IMG/VR virus record: IMGVR_UViG_3300031707_000001
Coordinates: 62,001-126,000 of that record
Direction: 5' to 3' (one strand)
DNA: 64,000 nt
The notes below the pieces were generated by a model, which saw only the letters and a program-made list of their open reading frames with translations, searched no databases and was not told where the DNA came from. Made by a program: the position numbers and the translations under genes. This document shows positions 6,340 to 49,196 of the stretch, piece by piece. Within the stretch, counting starts at the first letter, position 1. Each line of letters starts with the position of its first letter.

Positions 6340-6543
6340 AGGAGTAAACGCTATAAAAACAGCCAAGCATAGCTTCTTGGATAGTAAGGGACGCTGCTGG
6401 ACTGCCTGCTCCGAGTGTGAGCGTGGTGGTAATGGATCTGACACGGACAAGTGTATGTGTGGTTATCACATAAGAAGATTCAATAAACTCGGATGTTTTA
6501 TTGGTATACTGTTAAAAGGAATAAAAGCAAAGGAGTGAAAGGT

Positions 6544-7701
6544 ATGAATTCATCTAGTATTGCAGGTCAAAGGAAGATATGGCCAACTCTCTACAAGAAA
6601 ACTTCTACTGGGGCTGATCAAGCGTGGACAGTTTCAGTAGTCGGGAACCAGATTATTACGAAGTACGGTCAGGTAGGTGGGAAGATACAAGAGACGCCTC
6701 CGACTACTTGTGAAGGCAAGAATATTGGCAAAGCCAACGAAACTACGGCCGAGGACCAGGCGTTGTCGGAAGCCCAGTCGCTGTGGGAGAAGAAGCTAAA
6801 GAAAGACTACAGTGAATCGTTGGACAAGGCTCGCAAAGGTGAAGCCAGTTCATTGATTGAGGGTGGTATCCTTCCCATGCTTGCGAAGCGCTATGACCAG
6901 GACGGTGAGAAGATCGTATGGCCCGCTGTCTGCCAACCAAAGTTGGATGGCCACAGATGTATTGCCATGGTAGACGACAAAGGCAAGTGCACGTTGTGGA
7001 GCCGTACTCGTAAGCCTATCAAGAGTATGCCTCATATTGTGGACGCTATTGAAAAACTGGGATGTGTTGGTATACTCGACGGTGAGCTGTACAACCACGA
7101 TTATCACAACAAGTTTGAAGAACTATGTCACTTCATACGGTCATCTGAATCGGTTAAAGGATGTGAAATTGTACAGTATCATATATACGATACGATTCCG
7201 TTGCCAGCTAACCAGTCAACGGCAACATTTATTCGTCGTATGGGACAACGTGATATAGTACTACGTAAAGCCGATAAAGACATATTGGTGTCCGTGGAAA
7301 CTATTAGGGTAGAAAACGAAGATGAACTTATGGTAGCCTTTGAAAAGTTTCGCAAGGACGGATATGAAGGCGCCATAATTCGTAACGCAGCCGGGTTGTA
7401 CGTGAACAAGCGCTCTTATGATCTGCAAAAGGTCAAAGAGTTTGAGGATACTGAGTTCAAGGTAGTCGATGTTATCGAAGGCAAGGGTAAACTTGCTGGC
7501 CACGGCATCTTTGTTTGCGAAACCAAAACTGGTATGCAGTTCGAAGCTAAGATGATTGGTGAACTGGAAGCACTGAAGAAATTCTGGAAGGATCCCAAGC
7601 TCGCCATTGGCAAGATGCTGACGGTTCAGTTCCAGGGGTATACAACCAAGAACAAGGTGCCTCGATTCCCGGTGGCGCTTAGGTTCCGTGAGGACATATG
7701 A
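6544..7701 (+). CDS. lig: ATP-dependent DNA ligase with WGR-like N-terminal domain
   Basis: PMLAK, motif I QPKLDGHRC (KxDG), LDGELY, YHIYD, GYEGAIIR, KRSYDLQKVKEF, TVQFQGYT...PRFPV. Confidence 0.92.
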   Translation: MNSSSIAGQRKIWPTLYKKTSTGADQAWTVSVVGNQIITKYGQVGGKIQETPPTTCEGKNIGKANETTAEDQALSEAQSLWEKKLKKDYSESLDKARKGEASSLIEGGILPMLAKRYDQDGEKIVWPAVCQPKLDGHRCIAMVDDKGKCTLWSRTRKPIKSMPHIVDAIEKLGCVGILDGELYNHDYHNKFEELCHFIRSSESVKGCEIVQYHIYDTIPLPANQSTATFIRRMGQRDIVLRKADKDILVSVETIRVENEDELMVAFEKFRKDGYEGAIIRNAAGLYVNKRSYDLQKVKEFEDTEFKVVDVIEGKGKLAGHGIFVCETKTGMQFEAKMIGELEALKKFWKDPKLAIGKMLTVQFQGYTTKNKVPRFPVALRFREDI

Positions 7702-7966: not shown

Positions 7967-8236
7967 ATGGGTATGTATGATAACGTCAAGTATGAAGCTC
8001 CCTGCCCAAAGTGTGGGGAGAAGATCACGGCTTGGCAGAGCAAGGCTGGTCCTTGTTCGCTAGCTACCTTGGAGCCCTGGGAAGTGGCTAACTTCTATGC
8101 TCCTTGCCTCAAATGTCATGCATGGATAGATGCCAAGGTAAAAGCAGAGATAGAGCACGTTGTAAAACGCTGTGATGTAACACTGTCGGTGGATGAAGAC
8201 TTCTACCTGAGGAAACAAAATGACCAAAGAACGTAG
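7967..8236 (+). CDS. small Zn-ribbon protein
   Basis: MGMYD...CPKCG...WQSKAGPC...CLKC. AAGGAG RBS. Confidence 0.65.
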   Translation: MGMYDNVKYEAPCPKCGEKITAWQSKAGPCSLATLEPWEVANFYAPCLKCHAWIDAKVKAEIEHVVKRCDVTLSVDEDFYLRKQNDQRT

Positions 8237-8687
8237 TAAACAGATATTGGACTACATGGCCAAGCATTCTTCGCCAAAAGATGCCAGGGAAATCATACGC
8301 CGTTGCCAACGGGCCCTGAACAAGCTCTATCAACTTAAAAAGAGATACGATAAGTCTGGTAGATGGAATGCAAAACGTATCGACATTCCTGGTGGTTGTC
8401 CACATTGTCAATATCCCTTTGGAGCAGCCTGTGATGCTTGTCTTTGGACTGTGGCAGTAAATACAATCACAGCTACAAGCACGCATGAACCTTGTACACG
8501 TATTAGGTTCGGAGGATATACTTGGCACGAGGTATTCAACCTAGTAGCACTGAAACCAGATGGCATTAGAATCAACGAAAATTACTTTGATAGATTTTTT
8601 CCAAAGGTGCTGTTTGGAAAAGCTGTGAAGTTCTTACGAGGCCACATCAGATGGGCCAATAGAAAGGATTGGGGAAGTAAACTATGA
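8220..8687 (+). CDS. Cys-rich paralogue family member 1
   Basis: SPK..IIRR; GCPHC..C..CLW; C..IRFGG; FLRGHIRWA..K.WG, all shared with 12478, 13385 and 13858. Confidence 0.7.
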   Translation: MTKERSKQILDYMAKHSSPKDAREIIRRCQRALNKLYQLKKRYDKSGRWNAKRIDIPGGCPHCQYPFGAACDACLWTVAVNTITATSTHEPCTRIRFGGYTWHEVFNLVALKPDGIRINENYFDRFFPKVLFGKAVKFLRGHIRWANRKDWGSKL

Positions 8688-9658
8688 TTGTATTCCACCA
8701 CAACGACCTTGATGGAAGAATGTCTGCAGCGATCATTCATGGATGGGTTGGAATCAAAGATCCTCCTGAGATGGTACATGTAAATGAACACGGAAAAGCT
8801 ATTCTAGGTGCTATGTTCATTGAAATGGACTACGCCAAGCCTATTCCTTGGGATAAGATCAAACCCAACGATCAAGTTTGGATCGTAGACTTCAGTTTCA
8901 GTCCGGAGAACATGAAGAAGCTGTTTGAAATTACCCAGGATGTAACCTGGATCGACCACCACGTAACGGCCATTGAAGAGTTCAAGAATTGGCCCGGTAA
9001 GATCCGTGGTATCAGACAAGGTGGAACAGCTGCCTGTGTGCTGACTTGGAAGTATATCCATTGGTGGACAGCCCGGGGAGAAGGCGAAGAGAACTTTGGC
9101 CTGGGTTGCAAGCCTGGTTTGGAAGTTCCTCGTGCGGTAGCCATGATTGGCGACTACGATGCCTGGCTACATCAAATACCAGATTCAACTGCGTTCTACG
9201 AAGGATGCAAACTGCTCGACAGTACTCCAGGCAGCACTGATATGTGGGAACTGCTGACCGGAGAAGCAGAAGGTGTATTCGGTGATGGAACTCCGCTTCC
9301 CAAGCGAGACGTATGCGGTCCTATCATTGAAAAGGGCAAAGCTGCTATTGCATATCGAGATGCATACTGCAAAGACATGTGCGATTCATATGGCTTTGAA
9401 TCCGAGATCGACGGTATAAAGTGCTGGTTCACGAACATTTACAAGTTCGGATCATTTGGCTTCGCAGACAGGATGAAGAAGTATCCCATCTGTGCGGCCG
9501 GCGTATACAATGGGGAGAGGTGGACCATATCGCTTTACTCAACGACTGTAGACGTATCGGTGGTCTGCAAGAACCACGGCGGTGGAGGCCATACTGGCGC
9601 CGCCGGCTTTGTAACAAAGGACTTTCCCTTTGTAAAGAGTACGTTTGAATGCCTGTAA
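8684..9658 (+). CDS. DHH/DHHA1 phosphoesterase
   Basis: HHNDLDG, IVDFS, WIDHH, C-terminal GGGGHTGAAGF. Confidence 0.88.
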   Translation: MIVFHHNDLDGRMSAAIIHGWVGIKDPPEMVHVNEHGKAILGAMFIEMDYAKPIPWDKIKPNDQVWIVDFSFSPENMKKLFEITQDVTWIDHHVTAIEEFKNWPGKIRGIRQGGTAACVLTWKYIHWWTARGEGEENFGLGCKPGLEVPRAVAMIGDYDAWLHQIPDSTAFYEGCKLLDSTPGSTDMWELLTGEAEGVFGDGTPLPKRDVCGPIIEKGKAAIAYRDAYCKDMCDSYGFESEIDGIKCWFTNIYKFGSFGFADRMKKYPICAAGVYNGERWTISLYSTTVDVSVVCKNHGGGGHTGAAGFVTKDFPFVKSTFECL

Positions 9659-9882
9659 TGAACATATGGGCCCGGGGATGCTTAACTGTATCCTCGGGCC
9701 CTTAATACAGAATTGAGGAGCAATACAATGACTGTAGCTGAATTGAAAGATGAACTGGATGCATACCCAGGAGACTGGAAAGTCTTTATAGACTCCAGTG
9801 GATCGGTTGCAACACTCAAGGTAGAAAATACAAAAAAGCCAGGTGATAAAAACGATATCATCATGGAAGAAGATGACGAAGT

Positions 9883-10095
9883 ATGAAAAAGAAAGCTATG
9901 TGGCGGGACCCACAAAAGAAGATCGTGCCAAATCCAGGAAGCGATGAAGCTCTGGGAAAAGGTTGCAAGTGTCCAGTAATGGACAATGAACATGGAAAAG
10001 GATGGATGGGTCAACGAAATCTATTCGTCATGTCTGGTGATTGTCCACTTCACGGCAAGTTGATGGCTAAAGCCAAGCCAGTACGGAGGAATTAG
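9883..10095 (+). CDS. small Cys-containing phage protein
   Basis: PNPGSDEA..GCKCPVMDNEHGKG...CPLH. Confidence 0.6.
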   Translation: MKKKAMWRDPQKKIVPNPGSDEALGKGCKCPVMDNEHGKGWMGQRNLFVMSGDCPLHGKLMAKAKPVRRN

Positions 10096-10098
10096 ACG

Positions 10099-10482
10099 AT
10101 GTGTAGAGCACACTATTCAGGACCAGGATTGGTTGAGATAAAGCCATACAAGGAAAGGCTCAAACCCAACGGCAGACCGAATGGAACCTTTGTCATTTCC
10201 ATTGACGATGGTTATGTCGAGTACTCCTACGACCTGCGTCTTCGCAGCGAAAAGTATAGTATAGACTATGAAAAGATTTTCTTCAATGTCAGGGACAAGG
10301 ACGGCCGGTTGCACGAATCCAGTTTCATTAGGATGAATTTTGAATCAGATACGCTTTCGTTTGGAAGCTTAGCCCCCAAAGACCTTAATATTCACCCATA
10401 CCCGGCTATAATACATGTAGGTATTATATCTGTACAACTAACAACCAAAAGGAGACAGTGTTATGAAGATCATCGTTTCTAA
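10099..10482 (+). CDS. doubtful mosaic ORF containing sequence copied from the gene at 44025
   Basis: Contains exact copies of 44408-44480 and 44297-44326; runs through a promoter motif. Confidence 0.3.
   Translation: MCRAHYSGPGLVEIKPYKERLKPNGRPNGTFVISIDDGYVEYSYDLRLRSEKYSIDYEKIFFNVRDKDGRLHESSFIRMNFESDTLSFGSLAPKDLNIHPYPAIIHVGIISVQLTTKRRQCYEDHRF
10384..10421 (+). promoter_or_regulatory. CTTAAT-N17-TATAAT promoter-like element (copy 2)
   Basis: CTTAAT 10384-10389, TATAAT 10407-10412, then ACATGTAGG. Confidence 0.6.
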
Positions 10483-10600
10483 CATGACAGCAGCAGCTTC
10501 GGCATTCTCGGCTCAGACGATTGGGTTGCGGACTACAATGCAAAGTACTGCACGGTTGCCGACGTTCCCGTGGAACCGGTTCCCGTGGTCTAAACGTTAG
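10463..10600 (+). CDS. 45-aa small protein (not in ORF track)
   Basis: AAAGGAG RBS, MKIIVSNMTAAASAFSAQTIGLRTT...; lies between a promoter and a terminator. Confidence 0.5.
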   Translation: MKIIVSNMTAAASAFSAQTIGLRTTMQSTARLPTFPWNRFPWSKR

Positions 10601-10614
10601 GGTTGGAGGTGAAG

Positions 10615-10650
10615 GAACGTCCGGGGACTACAACCCGGGCGTTCTTTTCG
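10615..10650 (+). terminator. probable intrinsic terminator
   Basis: GAACGTCCGGG/CCCGGGCGTTC stem followed by TTTT. Confidence 0.55.
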
Positions 10651-10684
10651 CTATCGTAAGTTCAGTAAAGAAAGGAAGGATACT

Positions 10685-11203
10685 ATGAAGGAAAAGATCA
10701 GGCAGCGGTGTTTGGAGCAGGTCGTCAAAACGTGTCAGAGGTTGCGGCCCACAGAACTCTTCGAGAACAAGCAAGAGTTCGAGTTGGCCACGGCCGAACG
10801 AAACATGGCGCTTGAGGCTTGTTTCCCGCACATCACAGTTGAGGCTGTGGCCCGGGCGATCATTCGGGGTGAGCACAGTGTCTGTACAAGCTTGGCCGAC
10901 CACGGTCAATATCGGGATCTGTACGGTACAACGATGATGGTGCTGGAGAACATCTGGCGCAAAGCAACAGACCAGTTTCAAGTGCGTCGGAAGCTGTTCC
11001 TTGAGGAACGTCTAAGGCGCATCAATGCTGCTGAACAGAAGGCCAAGGAAGAAGAGGCTCTTGCAGTGGCAAAGGCCGCCGAAGCTTCCCTGGTAAAGCT
11101 GGTACCTGAAGTGCGGGTGGAGACGCCTGAGGTACTGCCTCCGGAGACAGACAGCGGACTGGGCACCTTGAAGAAGATGTTCAGCTGGATGAGACTGCTG
11201 TAG
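10685..11203 (+). CDS. hypothetical helical protein
   Basis: Strong RBS AAGGA, 172 aa. Confidence 0.65.
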   Translation: MKEKIRQRCLEQVVKTCQRLRPTELFENKQEFELATAERNMALEACFPHITVEAVARAIIRGEHSVCTSLADHGQYRDLYGTTMMVLENIWRKATDQFQVRRKLFLEERLRRINAAEQKAKEEEALAVAKAAEASLVKLVPEVRVETPEVLPPETDSGLGTLKKMFSWMRLL

Positions 11204-11212
11204 GAGGGGCAT

Positions 11213-11449
11213 ATGTGGAAGAGATGCCCAAAGTGTGGTGGACAGCATTGCAACTATGTTGCATGGTGCGCAACATGCATAGAACAAGAAGGGATAAAGG
11301 CACGTAAGCAGAGAGTAAGTACTAGCCTTAGCAAATTCGCTAAGGCTAGACGTGGACTCTTCAATGCCGATATCGAATTGGCTAAGTACGAAAAGGAAAA
11401 GGAAAAAGAGGCGATGGTACGTTACGTTCCAACGTATTCTGGAAACTGA
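11213..11449 (+). CDS. small Zn-finger protein
   Basis: CPKCGGQHC...CATC. GGAGG RBS. Confidence 0.6.
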   Translation: MWKRCPKCGGQHCNYVAWCATCIEQEGIKARKQRVSTSLSKFAKARRGLFNADIELAKYEKEKEKEAMVRYVPTYSGN

Positions 11450-11458
11450 AAGGAGTCA

Positions 11459-11662
11459 ATGCAGATGAAGACGGGAAAGCCCCAGCACGGTTCAGGAAAG
11501 ACCCGGGGAAACCGGATTAAGCGGCCAGGCCAGTCGTGGCTGGACGCAATAGGGAAGGGGTATAGCAAACCCCAACCGCCGGCCGAACCTGTGGAAGAAG
11601 TCATAGTGGAGGTCGTGGAACTGCAGAAGGTCATCGAACTTCCGAAACAAGAAGGAACATAA
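11459..11662 (+). CDS. hypothetical protein
   Basis: AAGGAG RBS. Confidence 0.55.
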   Translation: MQMKTGKPQHGSGKTRGNRIKRPGQSWLDAIGKGYSKPQPPAEPVEEVIVEVVELQKVIELPKQEGT

Positions 11663-11826
11663 ACGATGTCGGTTCCCGGTTGTCGAGGCAAACCGCCAGT
11701 GGCCGTGGATGGGTTCACTCCCATCTGCCCGCCCAAGAAAATAACTGGACTAGTATGCAAAGAGGGACTCCAAATCTTTTCTTTGTGCTGTCTTTAGTAA
11801 CCGCCTCACTCATTTCAAGGAGGACA

Positions 11827-12102
11827 ATGAAATTGCCGGAGAAGTACCAGAGAGTCATGGTGACAGGTTTGTTTGCGGGTATCTTTTCGTCTCACGTCTG
11901 TGTAGTCAAGGACGCCACGGACGAGGAGATATTGAGGGCTTGCAACAGAGAGGATCCCCGGGCAGCCGGGTTTTCCTGGACCAAAGTAATACGTACGAAG
12001 AAGGACATTCAGGATTTGAAGTTGAACGTGGCCAAAGGATTTCAAGGTATTCCGGTGCCTTGCGTGGAGTGTCCCGATCGGATACACATGGTTGTAAGGT
12101 AG
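11827..12102 (+). CDS. hypothetical protein
   Basis: AGGAGG RBS before ATG 11827; C-terminal CVEC...H. Confidence 0.6.
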   Translation: MKLPEKYQRVMVTGLFAGIFSSHVCVVKDATDEEILRACNREDPRAAGFSWTKVIRTKKDIQDLKLNVAKGFQGIPVPCVECPDRIHMVVR

Positions 12103-12214
12103 GCATTGAACGAGGTGGAGCGGCGGCTGCAGCGGCAACGTAACAGGGATCGATGTCAATAAGATCCTTTAACAAATACAATGCCGCTGTGGTCGTTCGC
12201 ACAAGGAGGAAACA

Positions 12215-12481
12215 ATGACAACAGAAGAGAAGATCCTAGCGCTTGTTGCACACTGGTATGATGTCAAGCAGAGGCAACGTCGTTTGCATACCGTAGACAT
12301 ACCCGCACTAATGCAGCGTATATCAGAATTGAAGCGTTCAGAGGGCGAATACCGGCATCAGTTAAAGGGCCAACTGAAGTCTGTGAAGGAAGATTATCGG
12401 CAGTTGCTTGAGTTGGAAGCGGACATACTGGTGCGGCTGGCAACGGTGATGGAGTTGGGGAAGGAAATCGAAAAGCTATGA
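12215..12481 (+). CDS. coiled-coil hypothetical protein
   Basis: AGGAGG RBS; heptad pattern. Confidence 0.6.
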   Translation: MTTEEKILALVAHWYDVKQRQRRLHTVDIPALMQRISELKRSEGEYRHQLKGQLKSVKEDYRQLLELEADILVRLATVMELGKEIEKL

Positions 12482-13026
12482 AAAGACTCACGTTAACAAG
12501 AGAACAACGTAATGCCAAGGTGCTACGCTATGTGGCCGAGCACAGTCCAAAGACGTGGGCTACAGCTATACGTAAGCGCTTCGAAACCGTGCTTAAAGCG
12601 CTGCGTCGGTACGAAGTTGAGCTCAACTCAATCTGCATAACTTTGTTGGGAAACGTTCGGACTAATCCGAACGGAAAGTACTATGATCAGGATCACTTTA
12701 GTTTGGGATGCCCACACTGCAATGACTTTCAGTGTCAGAGTGAAAATGGCAACTGCTTGTATGTTAAGGCGTGCAAGTTATATGGTATACGCTGTTATAC
12801 CTACGACTGTGCGTCGATTAGGTTTGGCGGGTTTACGTTGGATGATGTATCTGGTAGCGATGTTTCAGTTACATTGGCATCAGATGGTGTAAAAACAAGG
12901 GTCGCCGTATTGGGAACCGAAAGAACGACCCGTGTATTAAAGCAATTAGAGCAGTGCGTGGCGTTTTGCAAGGGTCACATTGCCTGGGCGAACAAACCTT
13001 ACTGGGGGAGGAAGTACAAGAAATGA
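12478..13026 (+). CDS. Cys-rich paralogue family member 2
   Basis: VLRYVAEHSPK; GCPHC; CASIRFGG; FCKGHIAWANKPYWG. Confidence 0.7.
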   Translation: MKRLTLTREQRNAKVLRYVAEHSPKTWATAIRKRFETVLKALRRYEVELNSICITLLGNVRTNPNGKYYDQDHFSLGCPHCNDFQCQSENGNCLYVKACKLYGIRCYTYDCASIRFGGFTLDDVSGSDVSVTLASDGVKTRVAVLGTERTTRVLKQLEQCVAFCKGHIAWANKPYWGRKYKK

Positions 13027-13388
13027 GAAGAATCACGATTAAGGAATACAAGGCCGAACTGAAGAAGCAAGGCGTATCACGCAACAACGTATGCTTCGTC
13101 TGTCCGGCCTGCGGCACGGTGCAGAGCGCCGACGACCTGATCAAGGCAGGCGCCGGCAAAAAGTTCGAGGACGTCAGGAAGTACCTGGGGTTCTCCTGCG
13201 TGGGAAGGTTCACCGGAATGAATCAACCTCCCAAGGTAAAGGGAACCCAGGTAGGGTGTGATTGGACCCTGGGAGGGTTGCTTGGCATTCACCAGTTGGT
13301 GGTGATAACTCCGGACGACGAATCGCATCCCTGCTTTGAGATAGCATCTCCGGAGCAGGCGCAGAAACACTTGGAGGCAAAAACGTGA
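13023..13388 (+). CDS. VVA0879-like Cys-rich protein
   Basis: FVCPACGTVQS...FSCVGRF...GCDWTLGGL pattern recalled for this family. Confidence 0.55.
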   Translation: MRRITIKEYKAELKKQGVSRNNVCFVCPACGTVQSADDLIKAGAGKKFEDVRKYLGFSCVGRFTGMNQPPKVKGTQVGCDWTLGGLLGIHQLVVITPDDESHPCFEIASPEQAQKHLEAKT

Positions 13389-13861
13389 ACAGGTACAAGA
13401 CAGACTGGAAGGTGTTGCGCTACATAGCAGAGCGGTCTCCGAAGCACTTTGCAACGCAGATTCGCAAGCGCAATCAGGGATTGCTGGATGCCTTGAACAA
13501 AAGACGGGATAGATTTATATCGTCCGTTGGATGTCCACACTGTGACGGTGATTGCTGTTCCTGCCTATGGTCGGAAGCGTATAAGCATTATCATTCTGAT
13601 AGGTTGCATATCATCATGAACGCCTGCGTTCTCGTGAACTTTGGTGGGTTGCATATCATGAACGCCTGCGTTCTCGTGAACTTTGGTGGGTACAGCATAC
13701 CCGATGTTCGGCAAGTCGTGAGTTATTGGAGTTTCCAGGAACAGGTTAAATCCATTCACGACAGCAACGTCCGGGAAATCATGAAAGCCAAGGCTTTCCT
13801 GAAAGCCCACATAGCGTGGACCAAAAAGCCCTACTGGGGCAGGAAGGTCAAGCATACATGA
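13385..13861 (+). CDS. Cys-rich paralogue family member 3 (with 14-aa tandem duplication)
   Basis: VLRYIAERSPK; GCPHC; HIMNACVLVNFGG duplicated; FLKAHIAWTKKPYWG. Confidence 0.7.
   Translation: MNRYKTDWKVLRYIAERSPKHFATQIRKRNQGLLDALNKRRDRFISSVGCPHCDGDCCSCLWSEAYKHYHSDRLHIIMNACVLVNFGGLHIMNACVLVNFGGYSIPDVRQVVSYWSFQEQVKSIHDSNVREIMKAKAFLKAHIAWTKKPYWGRKVKHT
13613..13691. repeat. in-frame tandem duplication, period 42 bp
   Basis: ATCATGAACGCCTGCGTTCTCGTGAACTTTGGTGGGT at 13613 and 13655. Confidence 0.9.
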
Positions 13862-14343
13862 AGCGAAAGACGCACAAGACAGACTGGGCCGTACTTCGAC
13901 GGGTAGCAGAGCGAAGCCCGAAGAGCTTTGCTCTGCGCATACGCAGGCGCAACGTTGGGCTATTGCGAGCCCTGGAGAAGCACAATTGGGTCTTCTCTTC
14001 CCACGTGGGATGTCCGCACTGTGTCGACTGCGAAACTTGCCTTTGGATAGAGGCAATGAAAGCAGTAAAGAACGTCAACGATGGATGTTGCGGAGTGCGT
14101 TTTGGTGGACTACCCCTACGTAGAATACATATGATTGCATATGATTCTACTTCAGAAAAGGTGTACTCACCAAACACCCTGCCCGGAGATCTGTTTCTAC
14201 GATACTTCAACGACGCAGTACGCTTCGTGAAAGCCCACATAGCGTGGACCAAAAAGCCCTACTGGGGCAGGAAGCTCAATAAACCAAAAAGCCCTACTGG
14301 GGCAGGAAGCTCAATAAACCATGAAGAAACTCAACACACGTGA
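13858..14343 (+). CDS. Cys-rich paralogue family member 4
   Basis: VLRRVAERSPK; GCPHC..C..CLW; CCGVRFGG; FVKAHIAWTKKPYWG. Confidence 0.7.
   Translation: MKRKTHKTDWAVLRRVAERSPKSFALRIRRRNVGLLRALEKHNWVFSSHVGCPHCVDCETCLWIEAMKAVKNVNDGCCGVRFGGLPLRRIHMIAYDSTSEKVYSPNTLPGDLFLRYFNDAVRFVKAHIAWTKKPYWGRKLNKPKSPTGAGSSINHEETQHT
14248..14320. repeat. 35-bp tandem duplication
   Basis: ACCAAAAAGCCCTACTGGGGCAGGAAGCTCAATAA at 14248 and 14283. Confidence 0.9.
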
Positions 14344-27397: not shown

Positions 27398-27787
27398 ATG
27401 CTACCGAACATGACAAACGAGGAAGCTTATATGCAGGGATTCAACCATCGGTGTGGTGGAATGGGCGTCGATCCACGTAAACTCCTGGCCAAGTACGGAG
27501 CCCTGGCGCCGATCGGAGATCCGGCACAGCAGCAGATAAGTGGAAATTCGTCGTTGTTGGCAGCCGGAGGTATTTCGAATGCCACACAGGAAGCTATGAA
27601 GCCCGAGCTGTTGAAGAAGCAGTTGCCTGAAATATATCCCCAAGTCAAGATGCCCAAGATTGCCGACCACATCGAGAAACTGAAGAGAGACAGGCTTCTC
27701 AAGGACAGAAAGCCGGAGAGTCAAACTCCTGCAAATTCTATTGCACGTAAATCAATTGGAATGGCCGCAGGGCCCTATGGAACGTAA
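27398..27787 (+). CDS. putative internal head protein (GF..C..G+DP leader)
   Basis: AYMQGFNHRCGGMGVDPRKLLAKYGA. Confidence 0.6.
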   Translation: MLPNMTNEEAYMQGFNHRCGGMGVDPRKLLAKYGALAPIGDPAQQQISGNSSLLAAGGISNATQEAMKPELLKKQLPEIYPQVKMPKIADHIEKLKRDRLLKDRKPESQTPANSIARKSIGMAAGPYGT

Positions 27788-27796
27788 GGAGATACC

Positions 27797-28309
27797 ATGA
27801 TCAAGTTAGCACAGTTGGAAGCTGCGTTGTCGAAGGTTAAGGGCGAAGTTAAAATCAAGAAGAGTTCAGCCAACTCTTTTTACCTGCAAGGTTTCATCCA
27901 GAAGTGTGCTGAAGCAGGTATGGATGCGGGACAGATCAAGCAGGCACTCGTTGACAAATTGATTAATGCGGGCCGACAGGTGGGAAAATATTTTGGTGGT
28001 TTGAAACATCAGTTTCGAGCAGGCAGGGATTATAACAAACTTTGGGGTAAAGATACTTGGGGAAAACAAGGTCCTTTCCGACCAAAAGATTTACCGGATG
28101 TAGCATACGGAGCTGGACACAAATATGACCAAATGCTTCAGAGTCCTGTCGGACAAGCTGTTGGATCAGCAGCCCACGGAGTCAGAGAAAATATGTCCCC
28201 ACTGATCCAATGGATAAAGCAGCATCCTATCTATGCTGGAGGTGTTGGTGTAGGTACCGCTGGAGCCGGCGCTGGACTACAAGCAGGTATTGGTGAAATG
28301 GGGGAATAA
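27797..28309 (+). CDS. putative internal head protein (leader family)
   Basis: FYLQGFIQKCAEAGMDAGQIKQA. Confidence 0.6.
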   Translation: MIKLAQLEAALSKVKGEVKIKKSSANSFYLQGFIQKCAEAGMDAGQIKQALVDKLINAGRQVGKYFGGLKHQFRAGRDYNKLWGKDTWGKQGPFRPKDLPDVAYGAGHKYDQMLQSPVGQAVGSAAHGVRENMSPLIQWIKQHPIYAGGVGVGTAGAGAGLQAGIGEMGE

Positions 28310-29634
28310 TGCCTCAGCCACCATCATATAGGAAAGCAGACGAACCCGGTAAGAACTGTGGTACGTGTAAGTACTTCTATCGGTTGGCCAACAATTGCCG
28401 CCGGTACAACTCTAAAGCGTTTGCCAGCATGGTATGCAGGACTTGGAAAGCAGGAATGCAGAAAGGTGCAGAGATGAAAGAATACTTTGAGACGTTGAGC
28501 AATACTGATCTTTCTTTCCAGGAAGGCTTCATTAAGGAATGCGTTGAGCGTGGAGTAGACCCGGAAGAGATGCTGAAAGTTGCACAGTTTTCTATAACAC
28601 CATCTCCAGGTTGGACGACACCCGTTGGTTCAAATCGAGGTGCTTTAGCTAATGCAGGAAGTGCATGGACAGCTCCTGGCCGAGCTTTAGGCCGTGGATT
28701 TCAAAGAATGAATCCACTCGGTTCGATGCGTTCTCAAGCAGCCGTTTATAACCAACCTATGCCTGGAGCAGGCTTTTCACAAGCAGCGGGATCAACAGCT
28801 GCAGGAACCAGTTCAGCTGATTTAAGAGGTATTCGGCGTAACGTTCAAGCAGGGAAGGCATCTCAGCTGGAACGTGGAATGTATTCTAATGTTCAACGTC
28901 AGGCTCCCGCAGTACCCGGCAAAGCAGCGCCAGCTCCAATTAACCCAACTAATCCACGAGGGGGTATGACTGCTCCAACTGCTGTTGCAGCAAAATCTTT
29001 GTCGCCTACAGCCATACCTGCACCAGCCGTGGCAAAGACGCCAGCTCCAGTTGTTGCTCCAACGCCAGCTGCAGTACCTACGGCACAAGCAGCGCCGGCA
29101 CAGCGAACTACAGGCGTATTCCAAGGTAATACTCCGTGGAGTCCTGGCCAATCGTTTACTCCGAAAAATTTGGGTACATCGCCAGCAGGTGGCGGCTACG
29201 CATATGGTACACGCCCAACTGCTGCACCGATGGCTGCACCACAACAACCTACCCAAACTCCTGCCGTTGCACAAGCAGCACAGCCAAAGCCAGGTCTGAC
29301 GTACCCGGCCGGCCATCTGGTCAATCAAGGAAAGAGTTTTCGTAAGCTGAGTCAGACCCTTGACGTAGACTATCTACGTAAGACGGCCGAGAAGCTTTGG
29401 GGAAAGAAAGCACAGGCTATTGATCCTATAAGAAATGGTGTATACGCAAACCCAAAGGCTATGGCAGTGTGGGGACAAGTGCCTCCGCAGGAACAGCAAA
29501 TGCAAAGCGCAAAGATGCCCGTAGAAGGAAAGCCCAATATGGTCGGTAGCGGAACAGCACCCGCACAGCAATTCAAAGCACAGCTTGCACAGGCAGGACA
29601 GAAGCCTACGCAACTTGACACCCCAACGTACTAA
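28309..29634 (+). CDS. putative internal head protein: 4-Cys N-domain, leader, long Ala/Pro/Thr-rich region
   Basis: CGTCKYF...C...VCRTW; FQEGFIKECVERGVDPEEMLKVA. Confidence 0.65.
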   Translation: MPQPPSYRKADEPGKNCGTCKYFYRLANNCRRYNSKAFASMVCRTWKAGMQKGAEMKEYFETLSNTDLSFQEGFIKECVERGVDPEEMLKVAQFSITPSPGWTTPVGSNRGALANAGSAWTAPGRALGRGFQRMNPLGSMRSQAAVYNQPMPGAGFSQAAGSTAAGTSSADLRGIRRNVQAGKASQLERGMYSNVQRQAPAVPGKAAPAPINPTNPRGGMTAPTAVAAKSLSPTAIPAPAVAKTPAPVVAPTPAAVPTAQAAPAQRTTGVFQGNTPWSPGQSFTPKNLGTSPAGGGYAYGTRPTAAPMAAPQQPTQTPAVAQAAQPKPGLTYPAGHLVNQGKSFRKLSQTLDVDYLRKTAEKLWGKKAQAIDPIRNGVYANPKAMAVWGQVPPQEQQMQSAKMPVEGKPNMVGSGTAPAQQFKAQLAQAGQKPTQLDTPTY

Positions 29635-29643
29635 GGAGACAGC

Positions 29644-30294
29644 ATGAAATTTGATAAGATGACAACTCGACAGTTGGACTACGTGGAAGGCTTCATTAAG
29701 AAGTGTGTTGCGCTGGGGGTGGACCCGGAAGTTGCAATAAAGAGTGCTGCTACCCCATACGATATCCCGGGTATGCCATGGGCAAACAATATGAGTGGCT
29801 CGTCTTCTTTGGAGACGGCACCAACATTTTCACAACAGCTGGGAAGAGGTTGGGGAAACGCAATGTCTTCATTGGGTAAAAGAATGGCCAAGCCGGATGT
29901 AAGCGGAAGCGTTGAAGGTTCTGGATGGGATCCACGTACCTGGGGAAGACGTTTGGGAAGAGGAATGTATAATTTATCCGAAGAGGGACGATTCCTGGAA
30001 GGTGCCAGAAATCCCACAGAACAGAAGAGCATGTTCAACATTGCTGGGCAGCAGGGTGCTGAATCTGGAACCCGGGCCGTAAGACAGATGTCAGATCTGG
30101 CAAGACGCCAGAAGGAATACGAGAGAACCACGGGCGGATTGTCCGGCCGTCAGTTCGTAAAAGGATCGCCCTATGCTCTTGGCCAGCCCAAGGCGCAATA
30201 TGGTGGCAAATTGCAACAGTACGAACCGCCAAAGAGAGTTGAACCGCCCAAGCTGCCATCCAAGCGTACGCCTGGGGCGCCTGTAGCGTTTTAA
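29644..30294 (+). CDS. putative internal head protein (leader family)
   Basis: YVEGFIKKCVALGVDPEVAIKSAA. Confidence 0.6.
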   Translation: MKFDKMTTRQLDYVEGFIKKCVALGVDPEVAIKSAATPYDIPGMPWANNMSGSSSLETAPTFSQQLGRGWGNAMSSLGKRMAKPDVSGSVEGSGWDPRTWGRRLGRGMYNLSEEGRFLEGARNPTEQKSMFNIAGQQGAESGTRAVRQMSDLARRQKEYERTTGGLSGRQFVKGSPYALGQPKAQYGGKLQQYEPPKRVEPPKLPSKRTPGAPVAF

Positions 30295-30308
30295 CCAAGG
30301 AGACACAA

Positions 30309-30827
30309 ATGAAGTTAGCAGAAATGAGCAATATGGACCTGGCCTACATCGAAGGATTCATTGAGAAGTGTGCTGCACACAAAGTGGATCCAGAACTGTT
30401 CTTGGAAGCATTGATGAGAAAATCGGCACAGGTTGAAGTACAGAAGCCTATGCCTGGTGGATCAGATACAGGACCCGCACAGTCTCCAGCCAAAGATCCG
30501 TCTACATACGTGCCATCTAACAAAGGTATTGGACGGAAAGTCAGCAAAGTTATAACGCTTCCCAAGTTGGGCGCCGCCGAGGAAGACGGACCTGATTATG
30601 AAGGTAGACGTCGGAAGACAATCGTAGGACTTGGTGCCGGACTTGGTGCAATTCCGGGAGGAATGGCGGGTGCTGCAGCAGGCGGCCGTCATCCTGGAAC
30701 TGGCGCACTTGTAGGTGCTGGAGTCGGAGCAGGATTGGGCGGAGGTGCAGCAATGATCTACAACGCAATCCGGAACTCTCTTGGATTCAGTGCTATGGGT
30801 ATGCCAGTCACAGAACAGAAGAAGTAA
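30309..30827 (+). CDS. putative internal head protein (leader family) with glycine-zipper segment
   Basis: YIEGFIEKCAAHKVDP...RKSA; GLGAGLGAIPGGMAGAAAG. Confidence 0.6.
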   Translation: MKLAEMSNMDLAYIEGFIEKCAAHKVDPELFLEALMRKSAQVEVQKPMPGGSDTGPAQSPAKDPSTYVPSNKGIGRKVSKVITLPKLGAAEEDGPDYEGRRRKTIVGLGAGLGAIPGGMAGAAAGGRHPGTGALVGAGVGAGLGGGAAMIYNAIRNSLGFSAMGMPVTEQKK

Positions 30828-39215: not shown

Positions 39216-39746
39216 ATGGACAACCCACAATTGGGATTTACCCAAAGGCTCGATGTTGAATTGAAATCTTGTAGTATGCCATCGCACGATCCTCGAAGAG
39301 GTTCAACGGAAGAATTGATTCGTGACATGCATAGGATCCTCACAGGCAACGGAGACTTCAACCACGGTTTGATCTTCAAGGTGGCGTCTGCCAATACCAA
39401 CCTGGGAATGCTACAGGAAAGTGTAAATGGTATGTCAACCAAACTAGATGGTCAGATTACAAAATGTCTGGCGATACAGAATGCCCACGCACTTGAGGCG
39501 GCAGAGAGGACGACAGTAGCCAAGGTAGGAAGAGCCATATGGGAAAACAAGTCCTTGATTTTTGTGATTGTTCTTGGAGCTTTAGTATACTGGGGAACTA
39601 TTACCAAACAGGCAGCGGCGGGCATTGGAGAAGAAAAGCTGGCGAAGTTGGTTGATGCTCGAATAGAGAAAATTCTTCCCGGCGGCACTTCGTTATTGCC
39701 ATCCAAACAGCAACCCAATCCAACCAAACAAATCAAGACACCTTGA
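39216..39746 (+). CDS. coiled-coil protein with one C-proximal TM helix
   Basis: SLIFVIVLGALVYWGTI. GAGGT RBS. Confidence 0.55.
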   Translation: MDNPQLGFTQRLDVELKSCSMPSHDPRRGSTEELIRDMHRILTGNGDFNHGLIFKVASANTNLGMLQESVNGMSTKLDGQITKCLAIQNAHALEAAERTTVAKVGRAIWENKSLIFVIVLGALVYWGTITKQAAAGIGEEKLAKLVDARIEKILPGGTSLLPSKQQPNPTKQIKTP

Positions 39747-41679: not shown

Positions 41680-44025
41680 ATGTCAAAGTTTACTTCGTTG
41701 CTAGCGAATCTGCCCGTCGGACTTACCAAGAACGCCGATATTGAAAGTCCAGATGAGGTACAACTGGAACAAGATTTTGCACGTCTGGCCTATACATTCC
41801 TCAAGGACCGGGCTGCAGGTTTGATTCCATATCTGTTGGGATTTGAAGTCGTCGAACGTGAAGAGGACGGATCGAAGGCCGTAGGAATGTTTGGTTTCAA
41901 GATCGGTAAGGACTATTACTACGTGCCGGCTTTCTTCGTGAACAACCAGATCAAAGGCATGGATCTGCTATTTTCGAAGAGCACTAATATGTTCGTGCCG
42001 CTTCGTGAGCCGTGGATCAACCACATCATCAATCGGCAGACCATTCAGTTGGGCGGACCTATTTCTGAGCCAGAGCCTCTTCTTCGCCGGCAGTTTGAGC
42101 GTCCCCGTTTCGACTTCCTGGCCACACCACCTACGTTTCCTACAGGTATTCCAAAGGCATCAGAAGTCAAGTCAGCTGAAGCTATCCAAGCTGGGTTCAG
42201 TGCTTGGAATGACTTGCAGCAAGCTATTATAGATTCCGTCGAAAAAGATGCCGAGTTTCAGAAGGCGTGGGCAGGTGCTATTGCTCGTCTGGAGGGCACA
42301 CCGCTACCGTTCGAAAAGACGGCCGAAGGAAGCCGGTTGATCGATTGGATTGAAAAGAAGGGTGGAGTAAAAGCCGTCAACGTATTGTTCAAGACGATCA
42401 CAGAGAATCCAGGATTTGCCAAAGCAGCGTTGACGTTCTATCCCAATATTGAATCCTTGTTCGTAACGAAGTTTGCTGCTGAACTGGCGCCAGTGAAACA
42501 AGCTGCGAAGATTACAGTGATCACTGAAAAGACTGATTGGGTAGACGGTAAGGAAAAGAAACGCTTGGTGCGGGACGGGTTTACTATCCACGATACACGG
42601 GAACCTTCGGAGAAGTCCGAGACCTACGAGGTGGATTATGTCAAACGCTTCACAGCTCCAGATAAACCGGGTTTGTACAACGTGCTGCTACGTAACGGTG
42701 GGACGACACAGGCTTGGGTCTTCATGCCCTCTGCAGCGGCAAAGAACAAGTATTTGCTCGTTGTCGATACCGACGCCAAGAACTACTTCATGGCCGAACC
42801 CGGAGCACTATTTGTCCGAGATTCAGACATTATCGAAGGTCCCAATGCTTACTCAAAGGCCATAGATTTGTCTGATATGAAGATTGGGCACAAGTACATT
42901 ATGATCAATGCCCACGGGGAAGCATCTGTGCCAGTTGAAATCCGAAGCATCGTTGCTGAAGACGGTAAACGCATAAAGATGCACGTATACCATTTGAGTG
43001 GACCAAAGTATGAACGCCCAACTTACGGGCACGACTTCTCCACGCTGAAGACACACAGCAATATGGAACTGCAGAACGGGCCTGGCATTTGTGATCGGGA
43101 CTACATCCAGTTGGCTGACTATGAAGGCCGCAACTTGGCACAGGCTGGCCGTGATACAATCATTGTTCCAAGCAATTGGAAAGCATTGGAGATTCAGCCG
43201 GGCAACAAGGACATGGAAAGTTATGAGGCCAAGAACGTACAGGAAGACATGTTCCAGCCTGGCTCACAAACTGACGTAATGGATGCTTTGGCAAAGAACG
43301 CCTTCCACAAGGTTACGGTTGGATCCGATGACAAACTAGAGTATTACATCCAGATGGACGATAGCTTCGTGGACGGTAAGCCCATGAACTATAAGACAGC
43401 CATGGTTCGACTCGTATCCAAGTATGGCCTGGGTGTGGATGATTCAGAAACCATGCTCAAGGAAGCCAAGGATAACTTCAAGTCCAAGCGTCTCGTCAAG
43501 TTTGCACAGAGCCCAATGGTTGGTGTATACATGCCTCCAGAACAGCCTGTGACATATGGAATAGACGAGTTCAGTGGCGTAACAGAACAGCCGGCGCAGA
43601 ATCAGTTTATGCATGGCCAGATGACCGGCGTAGTTCCTCCACAGAACACAATGCGTCCTGGGTTCAACATTGGTGGTGAAACAGCCATGGACCTACAGGC
43701 AGCAGGGTTAGGCCAGGAAGCCGCAGGCGCCGGGCAGAAACAAGTATTCGACCACTCTACAATCGGGGGGCTGTCCAAGGTCTACGATTCCGGTGCAGTG
43801 ATTGATTCCTATGTTCCGGAACTGATGAAGTCCTTGGACCGTTTGGGACGTATCCTGTTCTTGTTCTATTGGAAGAACGAAGAGTTTACAGAACGCTATG
43901 GCAACGAAGACATGGCGGAAATGGAAGATACCATTCGGGGCGTGTTCAAGAGCTTTGGCGACCTGGTACTGCAGCTTCGTGAGAAGACCATTGGTTCCGA
44001 GGAATCAACGAACACGATCATATAA
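41680..44025 (+). CDS. large putative head/core structural protein
   Basis: AAGGAG RBS; KNA/KAS/KQA/KFA motifs; position in the head cluster. Confidence 0.6.
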   Translation: MSKFTSLLANLPVGLTKNADIESPDEVQLEQDFARLAYTFLKDRAAGLIPYLLGFEVVEREEDGSKAVGMFGFKIGKDYYYVPAFFVNNQIKGMDLLFSKSTNMFVPLREPWINHIINRQTIQLGGPISEPEPLLRRQFERPRFDFLATPPTFPTGIPKASEVKSAEAIQAGFSAWNDLQQAIIDSVEKDAEFQKAWAGAIARLEGTPLPFEKTAEGSRLIDWIEKKGGVKAVNVLFKTITENPGFAKAALTFYPNIESLFVTKFAAELAPVKQAAKITVITEKTDWVDGKEKKRLVRDGFTIHDTREPSEKSETYEVDYVKRFTAPDKPGLYNVLLRNGGTTQAWVFMPSAAAKNKYLLVVDTDAKNYFMAEPGALFVRDSDIIEGPNAYSKAIDLSDMKIGHKYIMINAHGEASVPVEIRSIVAEDGKRIKMHVYHLSGPKYERPTYGHDFSTLKTHSNMELQNGPGICDRDYIQLADYEGRNLAQAGRDTIIVPSNWKALEIQPGNKDMESYEAKNVQEDMFQPGSQTDVMDALAKNAFHKVTVGSDDKLEYYIQMDDSFVDGKPMNYKTAMVRLVSKYGLGVDDSETMLKEAKDNFKSKRLVKFAQSPMVGVYMPPEQPVTYGIDEFSGVTEQPAQNQFMHGQMTGVVPPQNTMRPGFNIGGETAMDLQAAGLGQEAAGAGQKQVFDHSTIGGLSKVYDSGAVIDSYVPELMKSLDRLGRILFLFYWKNEEFTERYGNEDMAEMEDTIRGVFKSFGDLVLQLREKTIGSEESTNTII

Positions 44026-45014
44026 TGGAAATAGGTACTAAAACCGACAATGTTGTGGTTTGGACCCCATACGATGCGCTGTATCCGCAATTCGATTCAA
44101 GTTGGCGACATGGCGTGGCAAAAGGCATGGTCGACCATTCGAATTGGATATGTGCACTCCCAGAAATTGGTAAAGATCCTTGGGTCAGGGATCTCAAGGA
44201 CTATTTGGCTCAGTGTCGTAAATGGGGGCCTGATAGTTGTTTGGATAAAAGACTTTGGCCTTACCGCTATGTTATGGCCTGGCATGATCCAGGAAATTTG
44301 AATCAGATACGCTTTCGTTTGGAAGCGTTGTTGCTGACTGGAGCACCGTTCGATGTTATCAGCATGGACCTATCAGGTGGAGAATTGCCACCACAGCTAT
44401 TTCAGCTCTATGAAAAGATTTTCTTCAATGTCAGGGACAAGGACGGCCGGTTGCACGAATCCAGTTTCATTAGGATGAATGCGGCGCTGCCTGGAGGCCA
44501 GGCGTTGGATCGGAATACCCCGGCTGATGTGCTGTGGAAGTACATTGGCATGCGTTACGGGTATACCGGGTTGGTGTGGTACTGGGGAATGCCCAATCCA
44601 CACGGTAAATTGGAACACGATACGTTGATTATGGACGAGTTATGGCGTACAGCCCAGGCTATCATGATGGAAAGCGTGTTGCGACGAACCATAAATAACT
44701 TTGACCTGAACCACAATTTAGGCCAATATATAGATTATCAGCGTATGAGACACGAAACCGGAAAATCGACCGCAAAAGAAAATCAGGCCGAACTTGTTCT
44801 GTTGCAAGTCCTGCAGAAGTTTGCGCCCACTATGTTGGCAGCAAGCACCGAAATTGATAAGCAGCACGAGCGCACGGAGGCTATACGTAATCGACTGGCT
44901 GCCCAGGCGAATGTGGCGCAGCAGGTCATACCTGATTTTGGTAAGGATGTCGGGATGATTGGAATTGACAATTACATCAAACAGCACTTCAAAGAGGCTG
45001 ATCCGCAGAAGTAA
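44025..45014 (+). CDS. hypothetical protein (source of the sequence duplicated at 10266-10368)
   Basis: 329-aa coupled ORF. Confidence 0.7.
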   Translation: MEIGTKTDNVVVWTPYDALYPQFDSSWRHGVAKGMVDHSNWICALPEIGKDPWVRDLKDYLAQCRKWGPDSCLDKRLWPYRYVMAWHDPGNLNQIRFRLEALLLTGAPFDVISMDLSGGELPPQLFQLYEKIFFNVRDKDGRLHESSFIRMNAALPGGQALDRNTPADVLWKYIGMRYGYTGLVWYWGMPNPHGKLEHDTLIMDELWRTAQAIMMESVLRRTINNFDLNHNLGQYIDYQRMRHETGKSTAKENQAELVLLQVLQKFAPTMLAASTEIDKQHERTEAIRNRLAAQANVAQQVIPDFGKDVGMIGIDNYIKQHFKEADPQK

Positions 45015-49183: not shown

Positions 49184-49196
49184 CGGAGATAGATCC

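What the first reader, a model, noticed from the sequence alone, without database searches (positions are those of the whole stretch)
10266..10368. 103-bp mosaic of two exact copies taken from a gene 34 kb away
Seen: 10266-10338 (73 bp) is identical to 44408-44480, and the adjoining 10339-10368 (30 bp) is identical to 44297-44326. The two source segments are joined in swapped order, directly upstream of a promoter. The first piece stays in its original reading frame (YEKIFFNVRDKDGRLHESSFIRMN). Inference: recent capture of self-sequence by microhomology-mediated recombination; it could supply an antisense or decoy RNA against the 44025 gene, or be a misassembly.
Basis: seen in the sequence. Interest (0 to 1): 0.6.

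Follow-up and report, generated by a model that had tools for sequence, protein, structure and literature searches.

The report
Self-copied DNA patch in phage gene
A 103-base patch stitched from two pieces of one of the phage's own late genes really does sit at the end of a small early gene of this uncultivated 211-kb phage, and it looks like a recent repair or replication scar, not a regulatory device.

Summary
Window 10266-10338 equals 44408-44480 (73 bp) and 10339-10368 equals 44297-44326 (30 bp), both exact, on the same strand and in swapped order. It is the only such dispersed repeat in the 210,732-bp jumbo-phage genome.

It is not a misassembly. The identical arrangement appears in three JGI samples, in ENA re-assemblies and in Logan contigs of two further studies. 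The 73-bp unitig has about twice the depth of its flanks.

The patch lies inside a real gene (10099-10482, 127 aa, good ribosome-binding site). Residues ~14-56 of that gene belong to an uncharacterised family of small phage proteins. The patch replaces the family's conserved C-terminal segment, including its invariant arginine, and makes the frame run over the next gene's start.

The donor is a conserved 329-aa late gene of unknown function. Its orthologues carry both pieces in natural order, so the copying went from late gene to early gene.

Best reading: a recent, fixed mutational scar from break repair or replication with two template jumps, or from capture of fragments. Two other perfect tandem duplications lie 3-4 kb away. 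Microhomology is not shown at the one junction that can be read. Antisense or decoy RNA has no support, because the copy has the same sense as its source. Low interest.

The parts
10266..10338 (+). Patch piece 1: exact copy of donor 44408-44480, read in the donor's frame (residues 57-80 of the chimeric ORF)
10339..10368 (+). Patch piece 2: exact copy of donor 44297-44326, read out of the donor's frame
10099..10482 (+). Chimeric 127-aa ORF with GGAGG 9 nt before its ATG. Residues ~14-56 are a member of a small phage protein family; the C-terminus is the patch plus read-through over the promoter-like site and the next gene's start
   Evidence: family profile E 1e-19 on window 10141-10308
44025..45014 (+). 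Donor gene: conserved 329-aa late-block protein of unknown function, next to a 794-aa ORF and downstream of RNA polymerase subunit genes
44408..44480 (+). Donor segment for piece 1 (residues 129-152, mostly invariant among orthologues)
44297..44326 (+). Donor segment for piece 2 (within the conserved stretch at residues 92-101)
10385..10412 (+). Sigma-70-like consensus match (10 of 12), unverified
10463..10600 (+). Next small ORF (45 aa) with an AGGAG ribosome-binding site; its start is overlapped by the extended chimeric ORF

Best explanation
The patch is a real, recent mutational scar that is fixed, as far as the contigs can show, in this uncultivated jumbo-phage population. A break or stalled fork at the 3' end of a small early gene was repaired with DNA copied from the phage's own late gene 34 kb away. 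My preferred mechanism is copy-choice synthesis with two template jumps. Synthesis entered the donor at 44408 and copied to 44480. It then slipped back 184 nt to 44297, copied to 44326, and returned to the broken locus. Equivalently, the patch is one continuous 103-nt read across the joint of a 184-bp tandem duplication or circle of 44297-44480. The patch replaced or cut off the conserved C-terminal segment of the small protein and shifted the frame, so the ORF now runs on to 10482. It probably persists because the 3' end of a dispensable accessory gene tolerates it, not because it has a function. Shown: identity, position, reality in several samples, direction of copying, loss of the family's C-terminus. 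Inferred: the repair mechanism, neutrality and recency.
For: Exact copies on the same strand, from within 184 bp of one gene. Present in Ga0315291, Ga0315274 (L009, 1 mismatch in 4,335 bp) and Ga0315273 (L012, 100% over 1,318 bp), in ENA contigs, and in Logan contigs of runs X2 and X5 that cross the junctions. In X2 the left-flank contig runs unbranched through 10265|10266, and the 73-bp unitig has depth 127 against 61-79 for the four flanks. The donor's orthologues hold both segments in natural order. The recipient's N-terminal domain matches a family of 60-130-aa phage proteins, whose conserved C-terminal segment with an invariant Arg is missing here; His stands in that column. Two further perfect tandem duplications lie in the same early block. 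One is 35 bp x 2.1 at 14248-14321, flanked by ACCA, which also frameshifts a gene's 3' end over the next start. The other is 45/42 bp at 13605-13691, flanked by GGT. So backward slippage is active in this genome. No reverse transcriptase, no known RNA family and no unusual RNA fold.
Against: The internal junction shows no perfect microhomology (GAAT|TTTG; only 3 of 4 imperfect), which fits blunt ligation of fragments at least as well as template switching. No insertion-free allele or close relative with this locus was found, so the outer junctions and any deleted ancestral sequence are unknown. Removing the 103 bp recreates codon GAT followed directly by TAG. That could mean a pure insertion next to an already premature stop (chance about 3 in 64). 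Zero variation among samples gives no test of selection, so a function cannot be excluded. Contig-level data drop rare variants.
Confidence: 0.68

Rival explanations
1. The scar is the same, but it was made by end joining. Two short fragments (73 and 30 bp) of locally shredded phage DNA were ligated blunt into a double-strand break, for example by the phage's own ATP-dependent DNA ligase or by a host end-joining system.
For: There is no perfect microhomology at the one readable junction. An ATP-dependent DNA ligase gene lies 2.6 kb upstream (6493-7701; PF01068 and PF14743). Both fragments come from one 184-bp region, as expected from local degradation.
Against: Both pieces kept the same orientation (1 in 4 by chance for random ligation). 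The internal joint is exactly what a backward slip gives. The tandem duplications nearby show slippage, with 3-4 nt microhomology. No Ku-like gene was looked for.
Confidence: 0.2
2. The chimeric protein is functional. An early-expressed small protein displays 24 conserved residues of a late-block protein and acts as a decoy or dominant-negative partner, towards a host defence sensor or towards the donor protein's binding partners.
For: Piece 1 is in frame and comes from one of the most conserved stretches of the donor (invariant Y129, E130, F134-R137, D140, G141, S146-S147, I149-M151). The gene has a good ribosome-binding site inside a tight operon. The allele appears in every sample seen.
Against: In-frame joining has a 1 in 3 chance. 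Piece 2 is out of frame, and the ORF ends in read-through of a promoter-like spacer. The family's invariant Arg is lost. The resemblance of piece 1 to the family's C-terminus is not significant (hhalign E 0.069, probability 0.8%; rank 529 of 1,907 in a six-frame scan of the genome). The AF2 model gives no confident fold for residues 81-127. There is no variation on which to test selection.
Confidence: 0.07
3. The patch is a regulatory RNA element, either antisense or decoy, acting against the 44025 gene.
For: 103 nt of perfect identity to the target. Weak minus-strand promoter-like matches at 10292-10265 and 10286-10258 (9 of 12).
Against: It is a direct repeat inside a plus-strand coding operon, so its main transcript has the same sense as the target. 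No terminator-like site flanks it. The fold is no better than shuffles (z 0.81). No Rfam match. No RNA runs hold the sequence.
Confidence: 0.03
4. Assembly chimera or artefact.
For: Short-read metagenome assembly; the 73-bp repeat breaks k=31 unitigs.
Against: The exact 127-aa product was read on 6 contigs from separate assemblies. Identical DNA is in L009 and L012 from other samples. Logan contigs of X2 and X5 cross all three junctions. The whole patch (103 bp) is shorter than the 127-bp overlap of the assembly, so single k-mers span it (inference).
Confidence: 0.02

Closest known systems
Template-switch / templated-insertion rearrangements (FoSTeS, MMBIR, polymerase-theta-type templated insertions; bacterial slipped-strand duplication)
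   Same: A short insertion made of several segments copied from elsewhere in the same genome, with a backward jump on the same template and the same orientation. Neighbouring tandem duplications have 3-4 nt junction microhomology. This class of event is reviewed in PMC12426944 and PMC5120786, which I found but did not read in full.
   Different: The donor is 34 kb from the recipient, not nearby. The one junction that can be read lacks perfect microhomology. The setting is an uncultivated jumbo phage, where I know of no described example (own knowledge; one literature search only).
Capture of DNA fragments at double-strand breaks by end joining (filler DNA)
   Same: Blunt junction; small fragments; no homology needed.
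   Different: Both fragments come from one 184-bp region in the same orientation, and no end-joining machinery was identified beyond a DNA ligase.
Phage genome mosaicism by illegitimate recombination (Hendrix model; own knowledge)
   Same: A novel joint at a gene's 3' end or gene boundary, tolerated by selection.
   Different: Here the incoming DNA is the phage's own, is only 103 bp long, and is itself a two-piece mosaic. It is not a foreign gene module.
Diversity-generating retroelement template/variable repeat pair
   Same: Two roughly 100-bp near-identical repeats in one phage genome, one of them inside a structural-block gene.
   Different: No reverse transcriptase, no adenine-specific differences (100% identity), segments in swapped order, and the donor segments lie mid-gene.

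Membership tests
Templated insertion by template switching (MMBIR/FoSTeS type) | Inserted DNA is identical to another locus of the same genome | tested here: met
Templated insertion by template switching (MMBIR/FoSTeS type) | Two or more template segments joined in one insertion | tested here: met
   73 bp + 30 bp, donor order swapped
Templated insertion by template switching (MMBIR/FoSTeS type) | Microhomology (2 nt or more) at the junctions | tested here: not met
   Internal junction 10338|10339: 0 nt perfect, 3 of 4 imperfect. Outer junctions cannot be tested without the ancestral allele.
Small phage protein family (KPNG...ISIDDGYVEY; no Pfam, one member hits phrog_17352) | N-terminal conserved domain | tested here: met
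   Profile E 1e-19 on window 10141-10308; 24 small-protein hits
Small phage protein family (KPNG...ISIDDGYVEY; no Pfam, one member hits phrog_17352) | Conserved C-terminal segment (IR.AFR...G.IR) with an Arg invariant in all 22 members | tested here: not met
   Replaced by the patch; His in the Arg column. The resemblance is not significant.
Diversity-generating retroelement | Reverse transcriptase gene in the genome | tested here: not met
   PF00078: no match in the 210,732-bp genome
Diversity-generating retroelement | Template and variable repeat differ at adenines | tested here: not met
   100% identity
cis-antisense regulatory RNA | Transcribed from the strand opposite to its target's sense | tested here: inconclusive
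   Direct repeat inside a plus-strand operon; only weak minus-strand promoter matches; no RNA runs
Assembly artefact | Junctions absent from independent data | tested here: not met

The most novel reading that the evidence does not exclude
The chimera is kept because it works. It would be an early-expressed small protein presenting a 24-residue, highly conserved peptide of a late-block protein, used as a molecular decoy against a host defence sensor that recognises that late protein, or as a timing brake on the late protein's partners. That would be a case of a phage building a decoy from a piece of its own gene.
Probability: 0.06. Interest if true: 0.65.

Novelty: new member of a known kind. 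Interest (0 to 1): 0.25.

Why it matters
The patch is a clean, dated-to-recent example of a multi-segment self-templated insertion in a natural phage population. With the two neighbouring perfect tandem duplications, it shows that small duplicative rearrangements at the 3' ends of accessory early genes are an ongoing source of new coding sequence in jumbo phages. It also warns annotators that the 127-aa ORF is a chimera and not a novel protein. It does not open a long-standing question.

Tried and rejected
1. Homology between donor and recipient, which would mean gene conversion between paralogous domains. MAFFT aligned piece 1 to the family's C-terminal motif, and hhalign's best local match fell exactly there, but with E 0.069 and probability 0.8%. 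A C-terminal profile scanned over all six frames of the genome ranked the donor 529th of 1,907. Rejected as not significant.

2. Ancestral allele. There was no DNA or protein match in the phage collection. The viral-contig scan found only 29%-identical relatives of the donor and none of the recipient. The closest DHH-gene relatives (68-77%) have different genes downstream. The word search found no closer family member. The left-flank pattern in JGI metagenomes returned only another assembly of the same phage, with the patch.

3. Donor function. No Pfam or PHROG match. The Atlas gave only low scores. The AF2 model had pLDDT 45 and was not searched further.

4. Recipient family function. No Pfam; one member hits an unnamed PHROG. 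The Atlas gave only unnamed viral clusters, below the lead threshold. The AF2 model is confident only for a beta-hairpin at residues 30-47.

5. Other checks, all negative: reverse transcriptase or DGR, known RNA families, tRNAs, RNA structure, a shared early-promoter motif (only two sites).

6. Family members' contexts. They lie in replication or early modules of unrelated phages and are not positional orthologues.

Full report
**Observation**

Reading the window directly and running the repeat finder confirm two exact matches. Window 10266-10338 is identical to 44408-44480 (73 nt). The adjoining 10339-10368 is identical to 44297-44326 (30 nt). The second match extends to 34 nt with one mismatch.

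Both copies lie on the plus strand, and the two donor pieces are joined in swapped order. The window is bases 62001-126000 of a 210,732-bp IMG/VR virus record. A self-comparison of that whole genome finds no other dispersed exact repeat. The only longer repeat is the 127-bp terminal overlap, which looks like the k-mer overlap of a circular assembly (inference).

**Is it an artefact? No.**

- The exact 127-aa product that contains the patch was read on six contigs from separate assemblies.
- A 4,335-bp contig from another JGI sample (L009) matches window 8983-13317 with one mismatch and carries the patch.
- A 211,586-bp contig from a third JGI sample (L012) is 100% identical over 1,318 bp across the patch.
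- In run X2, one Logan contig runs unbranched from 8600 to 10295. Another runs from 10309 through both remaining junctions to 12600.
- In X2 the 73-bp repeat is its own unitig at depth 127, against 61-64 for the early-locus flanks and 75-79 for the donor flanks. That is what two copies per genome predict.
- In run X5, from a different study, a 182-bp contig covers 10266-10447 without a difference and a 151-bp contig covers 10132-10282.
- No insertion-free joint was seen, but contigs drop rare variants.

**Context**

The genome is a jumbo phage. Its gene content includes:

- split multisubunit RNA polymerase genes (33002-37393 and 39743-41602);
- a protein with a weak tail-sheath match (55955-59893, PHROG E 4.5e-08);
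- an ATP-dependent DNA ligase (6493-7701);
- a DHH phosphoesterase (8684-9658).

All runs that hold it are sediment metagenomes.

The patch lies in a block of small, tightly packed plus-strand genes. It is not intergenic. It lies inside ORF 10099-10482 (127 aa), which has GGAGG nine bases before its ATG.

**The recipient gene**

An exhaustive HMMER search shows that residues ~14-56 of this ORF belong to a family of small phage proteins of 60-130 aa. The same domain also occurs in multiple copies in a few large proteins (P0129; several matched stretches in P0135 and P0148). The family has no Pfam model, and only one member hits an unnamed PHROG.

The family profile, built without the window's sequence, hits the genome once, at window 10141-10308 with E 1e-19. 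All 22 aligned members continue after the conserved Ser-Ile with a C-terminal segment that ends in an invariant arginine. In the window's ORF that segment is gone:

- the patch starts two residues after the Ser-Ile;
- His stands in the arginine column;
- piece 2 is read out of the donor's frame;
- the ORF then reads through the promoter-like spacer and 17 nt past the ATG of the next gene (10463).

**The donor gene**

ORF 44025-45014 (329 aa) lies in the late block, after a 794-aa ORF. It has orthologues at 91, 83, 79, 78 and 44% identity. All of them carry both segments in natural order, and both segments fall in strongly conserved stretches. The late gene is therefore the source.

A co-occurring relative's donor differs at 10 of 73 positions (record 3), while the patch matches this genome's own donor exactly. 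The copying was therefore intragenomic. The donor's function stayed unknown.

**A tempting lead that failed**

Piece 1, read in frame, aligns with the family's lost C-terminal motif. That would suggest homology-guided conversion or a selected functional mimic. Two tests rejected it:

- The profile-profile comparison places its best local match exactly there, but at E 0.069 and probability 0.8%.
- A profile of the family's C-terminus, scanned over every six-frame ORF of the genome, ranks the donor 529th of 1,907 hits.

The resemblance is within chance, and in-frame joining has a prior of one in three.

**Junctions**

Only the internal junction has both parents known. It is blunt, with donor 1 ending GAAT and donor 2 beginning TTTG. 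The base after donor 1 and the base before donor 2 both mismatch the patch. Only an imperfect 3-of-4 match lies one base back.

The internal joint (44480 to 44297) is exactly the joint that a 184-bp backward slip, tandem duplication or circle of 44297-44480 would create. The patch is one continuous 103-nt read across that joint.

Removing the 103 bp gives GAT followed by TAG. The event was therefore either a pure insertion two bases before a stop that had already cut off the family's C-terminus, or, which I think slightly more likely, a deletion of the native C-terminal coding sequence filled in with the patch. Without an ancestral allele this stays open.

**Supporting pattern**

The same early block holds two more perfect, evidently recent duplications.

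- A 35-bp unit is present 2.1 times at 14248-14321 and is bounded by ACCA. It frameshifts the 3' end of ORF 13816-14343 over the next gene's ATG.
- A 45/42-bp tandem duplication lies at 13605-13691, bounded by GGT, in frame inside ORF 13385-13861.

Backward slippage is therefore active in this lineage, and its products survive at the 3' ends of small accessory genes.

**Mechanism and rivals**

I commit to a repair or replication scar made by copy-choice synthesis with two template jumps. Blunt capture of two fragments by ligation is the main mechanistic rival.

Functional readings have no positive evidence:

- The copy is same-sense, so antisense pairing with the donor mRNA is excluded unless a minus-strand transcript exists. 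Only 9-of-12 promoter matches support one.
- There is no RNA family, no fold signal, no reverse transcriptase and no RNA run.
- A decoy-protein role for the chimera cannot be excluded, but it rests only on the in-frame conserved peptide.

**Comparison and verdict**

The patch works like the templated or filler insertions known from template-switch and end-joining repair. The class is reviewed in PMC12426944 and PMC5120786, which one search found and which I did not read in full. It meets the defining features of self-identity and multi-segment structure, but not junction microhomology at the one testable joint.

It is a real feature and a new example of a known kind of mutation, and most likely not a device. 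Interest is low to moderate.

Noticed in passing
window 14248-14321: A perfect 35-bp tandem duplication (2.1 copies) bounded by ACCA. It frameshifts the C-terminus of ORF 13816-14343 and carries it over the ATG of the next gene (14321).
   Followed up: partly
window 13605-13691: A 45/42-bp near-perfect in-frame tandem duplication inside ORF 13385-13861. It duplicates about 14 residues and is bounded by GGT.
   Followed up: partly
window 8220-8687, 12478-13026, 13385-13861, 13816-14343: Four paralogous small early proteins share a Cys-rich middle and a C-terminal HIAW.KKPYWGRK-like motif. Their 3' ends form repeat family D1.
   Followed up: no
window 33002-37393 and 39743-41602: Split multisubunit RNA polymerase beta/beta-prime-like genes (PHROG and Pfam Rpb1 domain 5 hits) in a 211-kb phage that also has a weak tail-sheath match at 55955-59893. 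It is a divergent jumbo myovirus with no DNA or protein match in the INPHARED phage set for the regions tried.
   Followed up: partly
window 27428-30396: A run of paralogous genes shares a repeated 31-47-nt block (repeat families D3 and D5; peptide like EGFIKKCV), which suggests a tandemly expanded gene family.
   Followed up: no
window 49725-49814 and 50202-50323: Low-complexity Asp-Pro and Ala-Gly repeat tracts inside ORF 49146-50645.
   Followed up: no
proteins P0129, P0135, P0148: The small KPNG...ISIDDGYVEY domain also occurs twice in a 329-aa protein and gives 6 and 5 matched stretches in proteins of 3,930 and 890 aa. It is therefore a reusable module of unknown function without a Pfam entry.
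   Followed up: no
L010:179-778 (relative of the DHH locus): A relative with a 68%-identical DHH gene carries an Endonuclease VII-family gene on the opposite strand just upstream. The gene content downstream of DHH differs between relatives, so this is a variable region.
   Followed up: no
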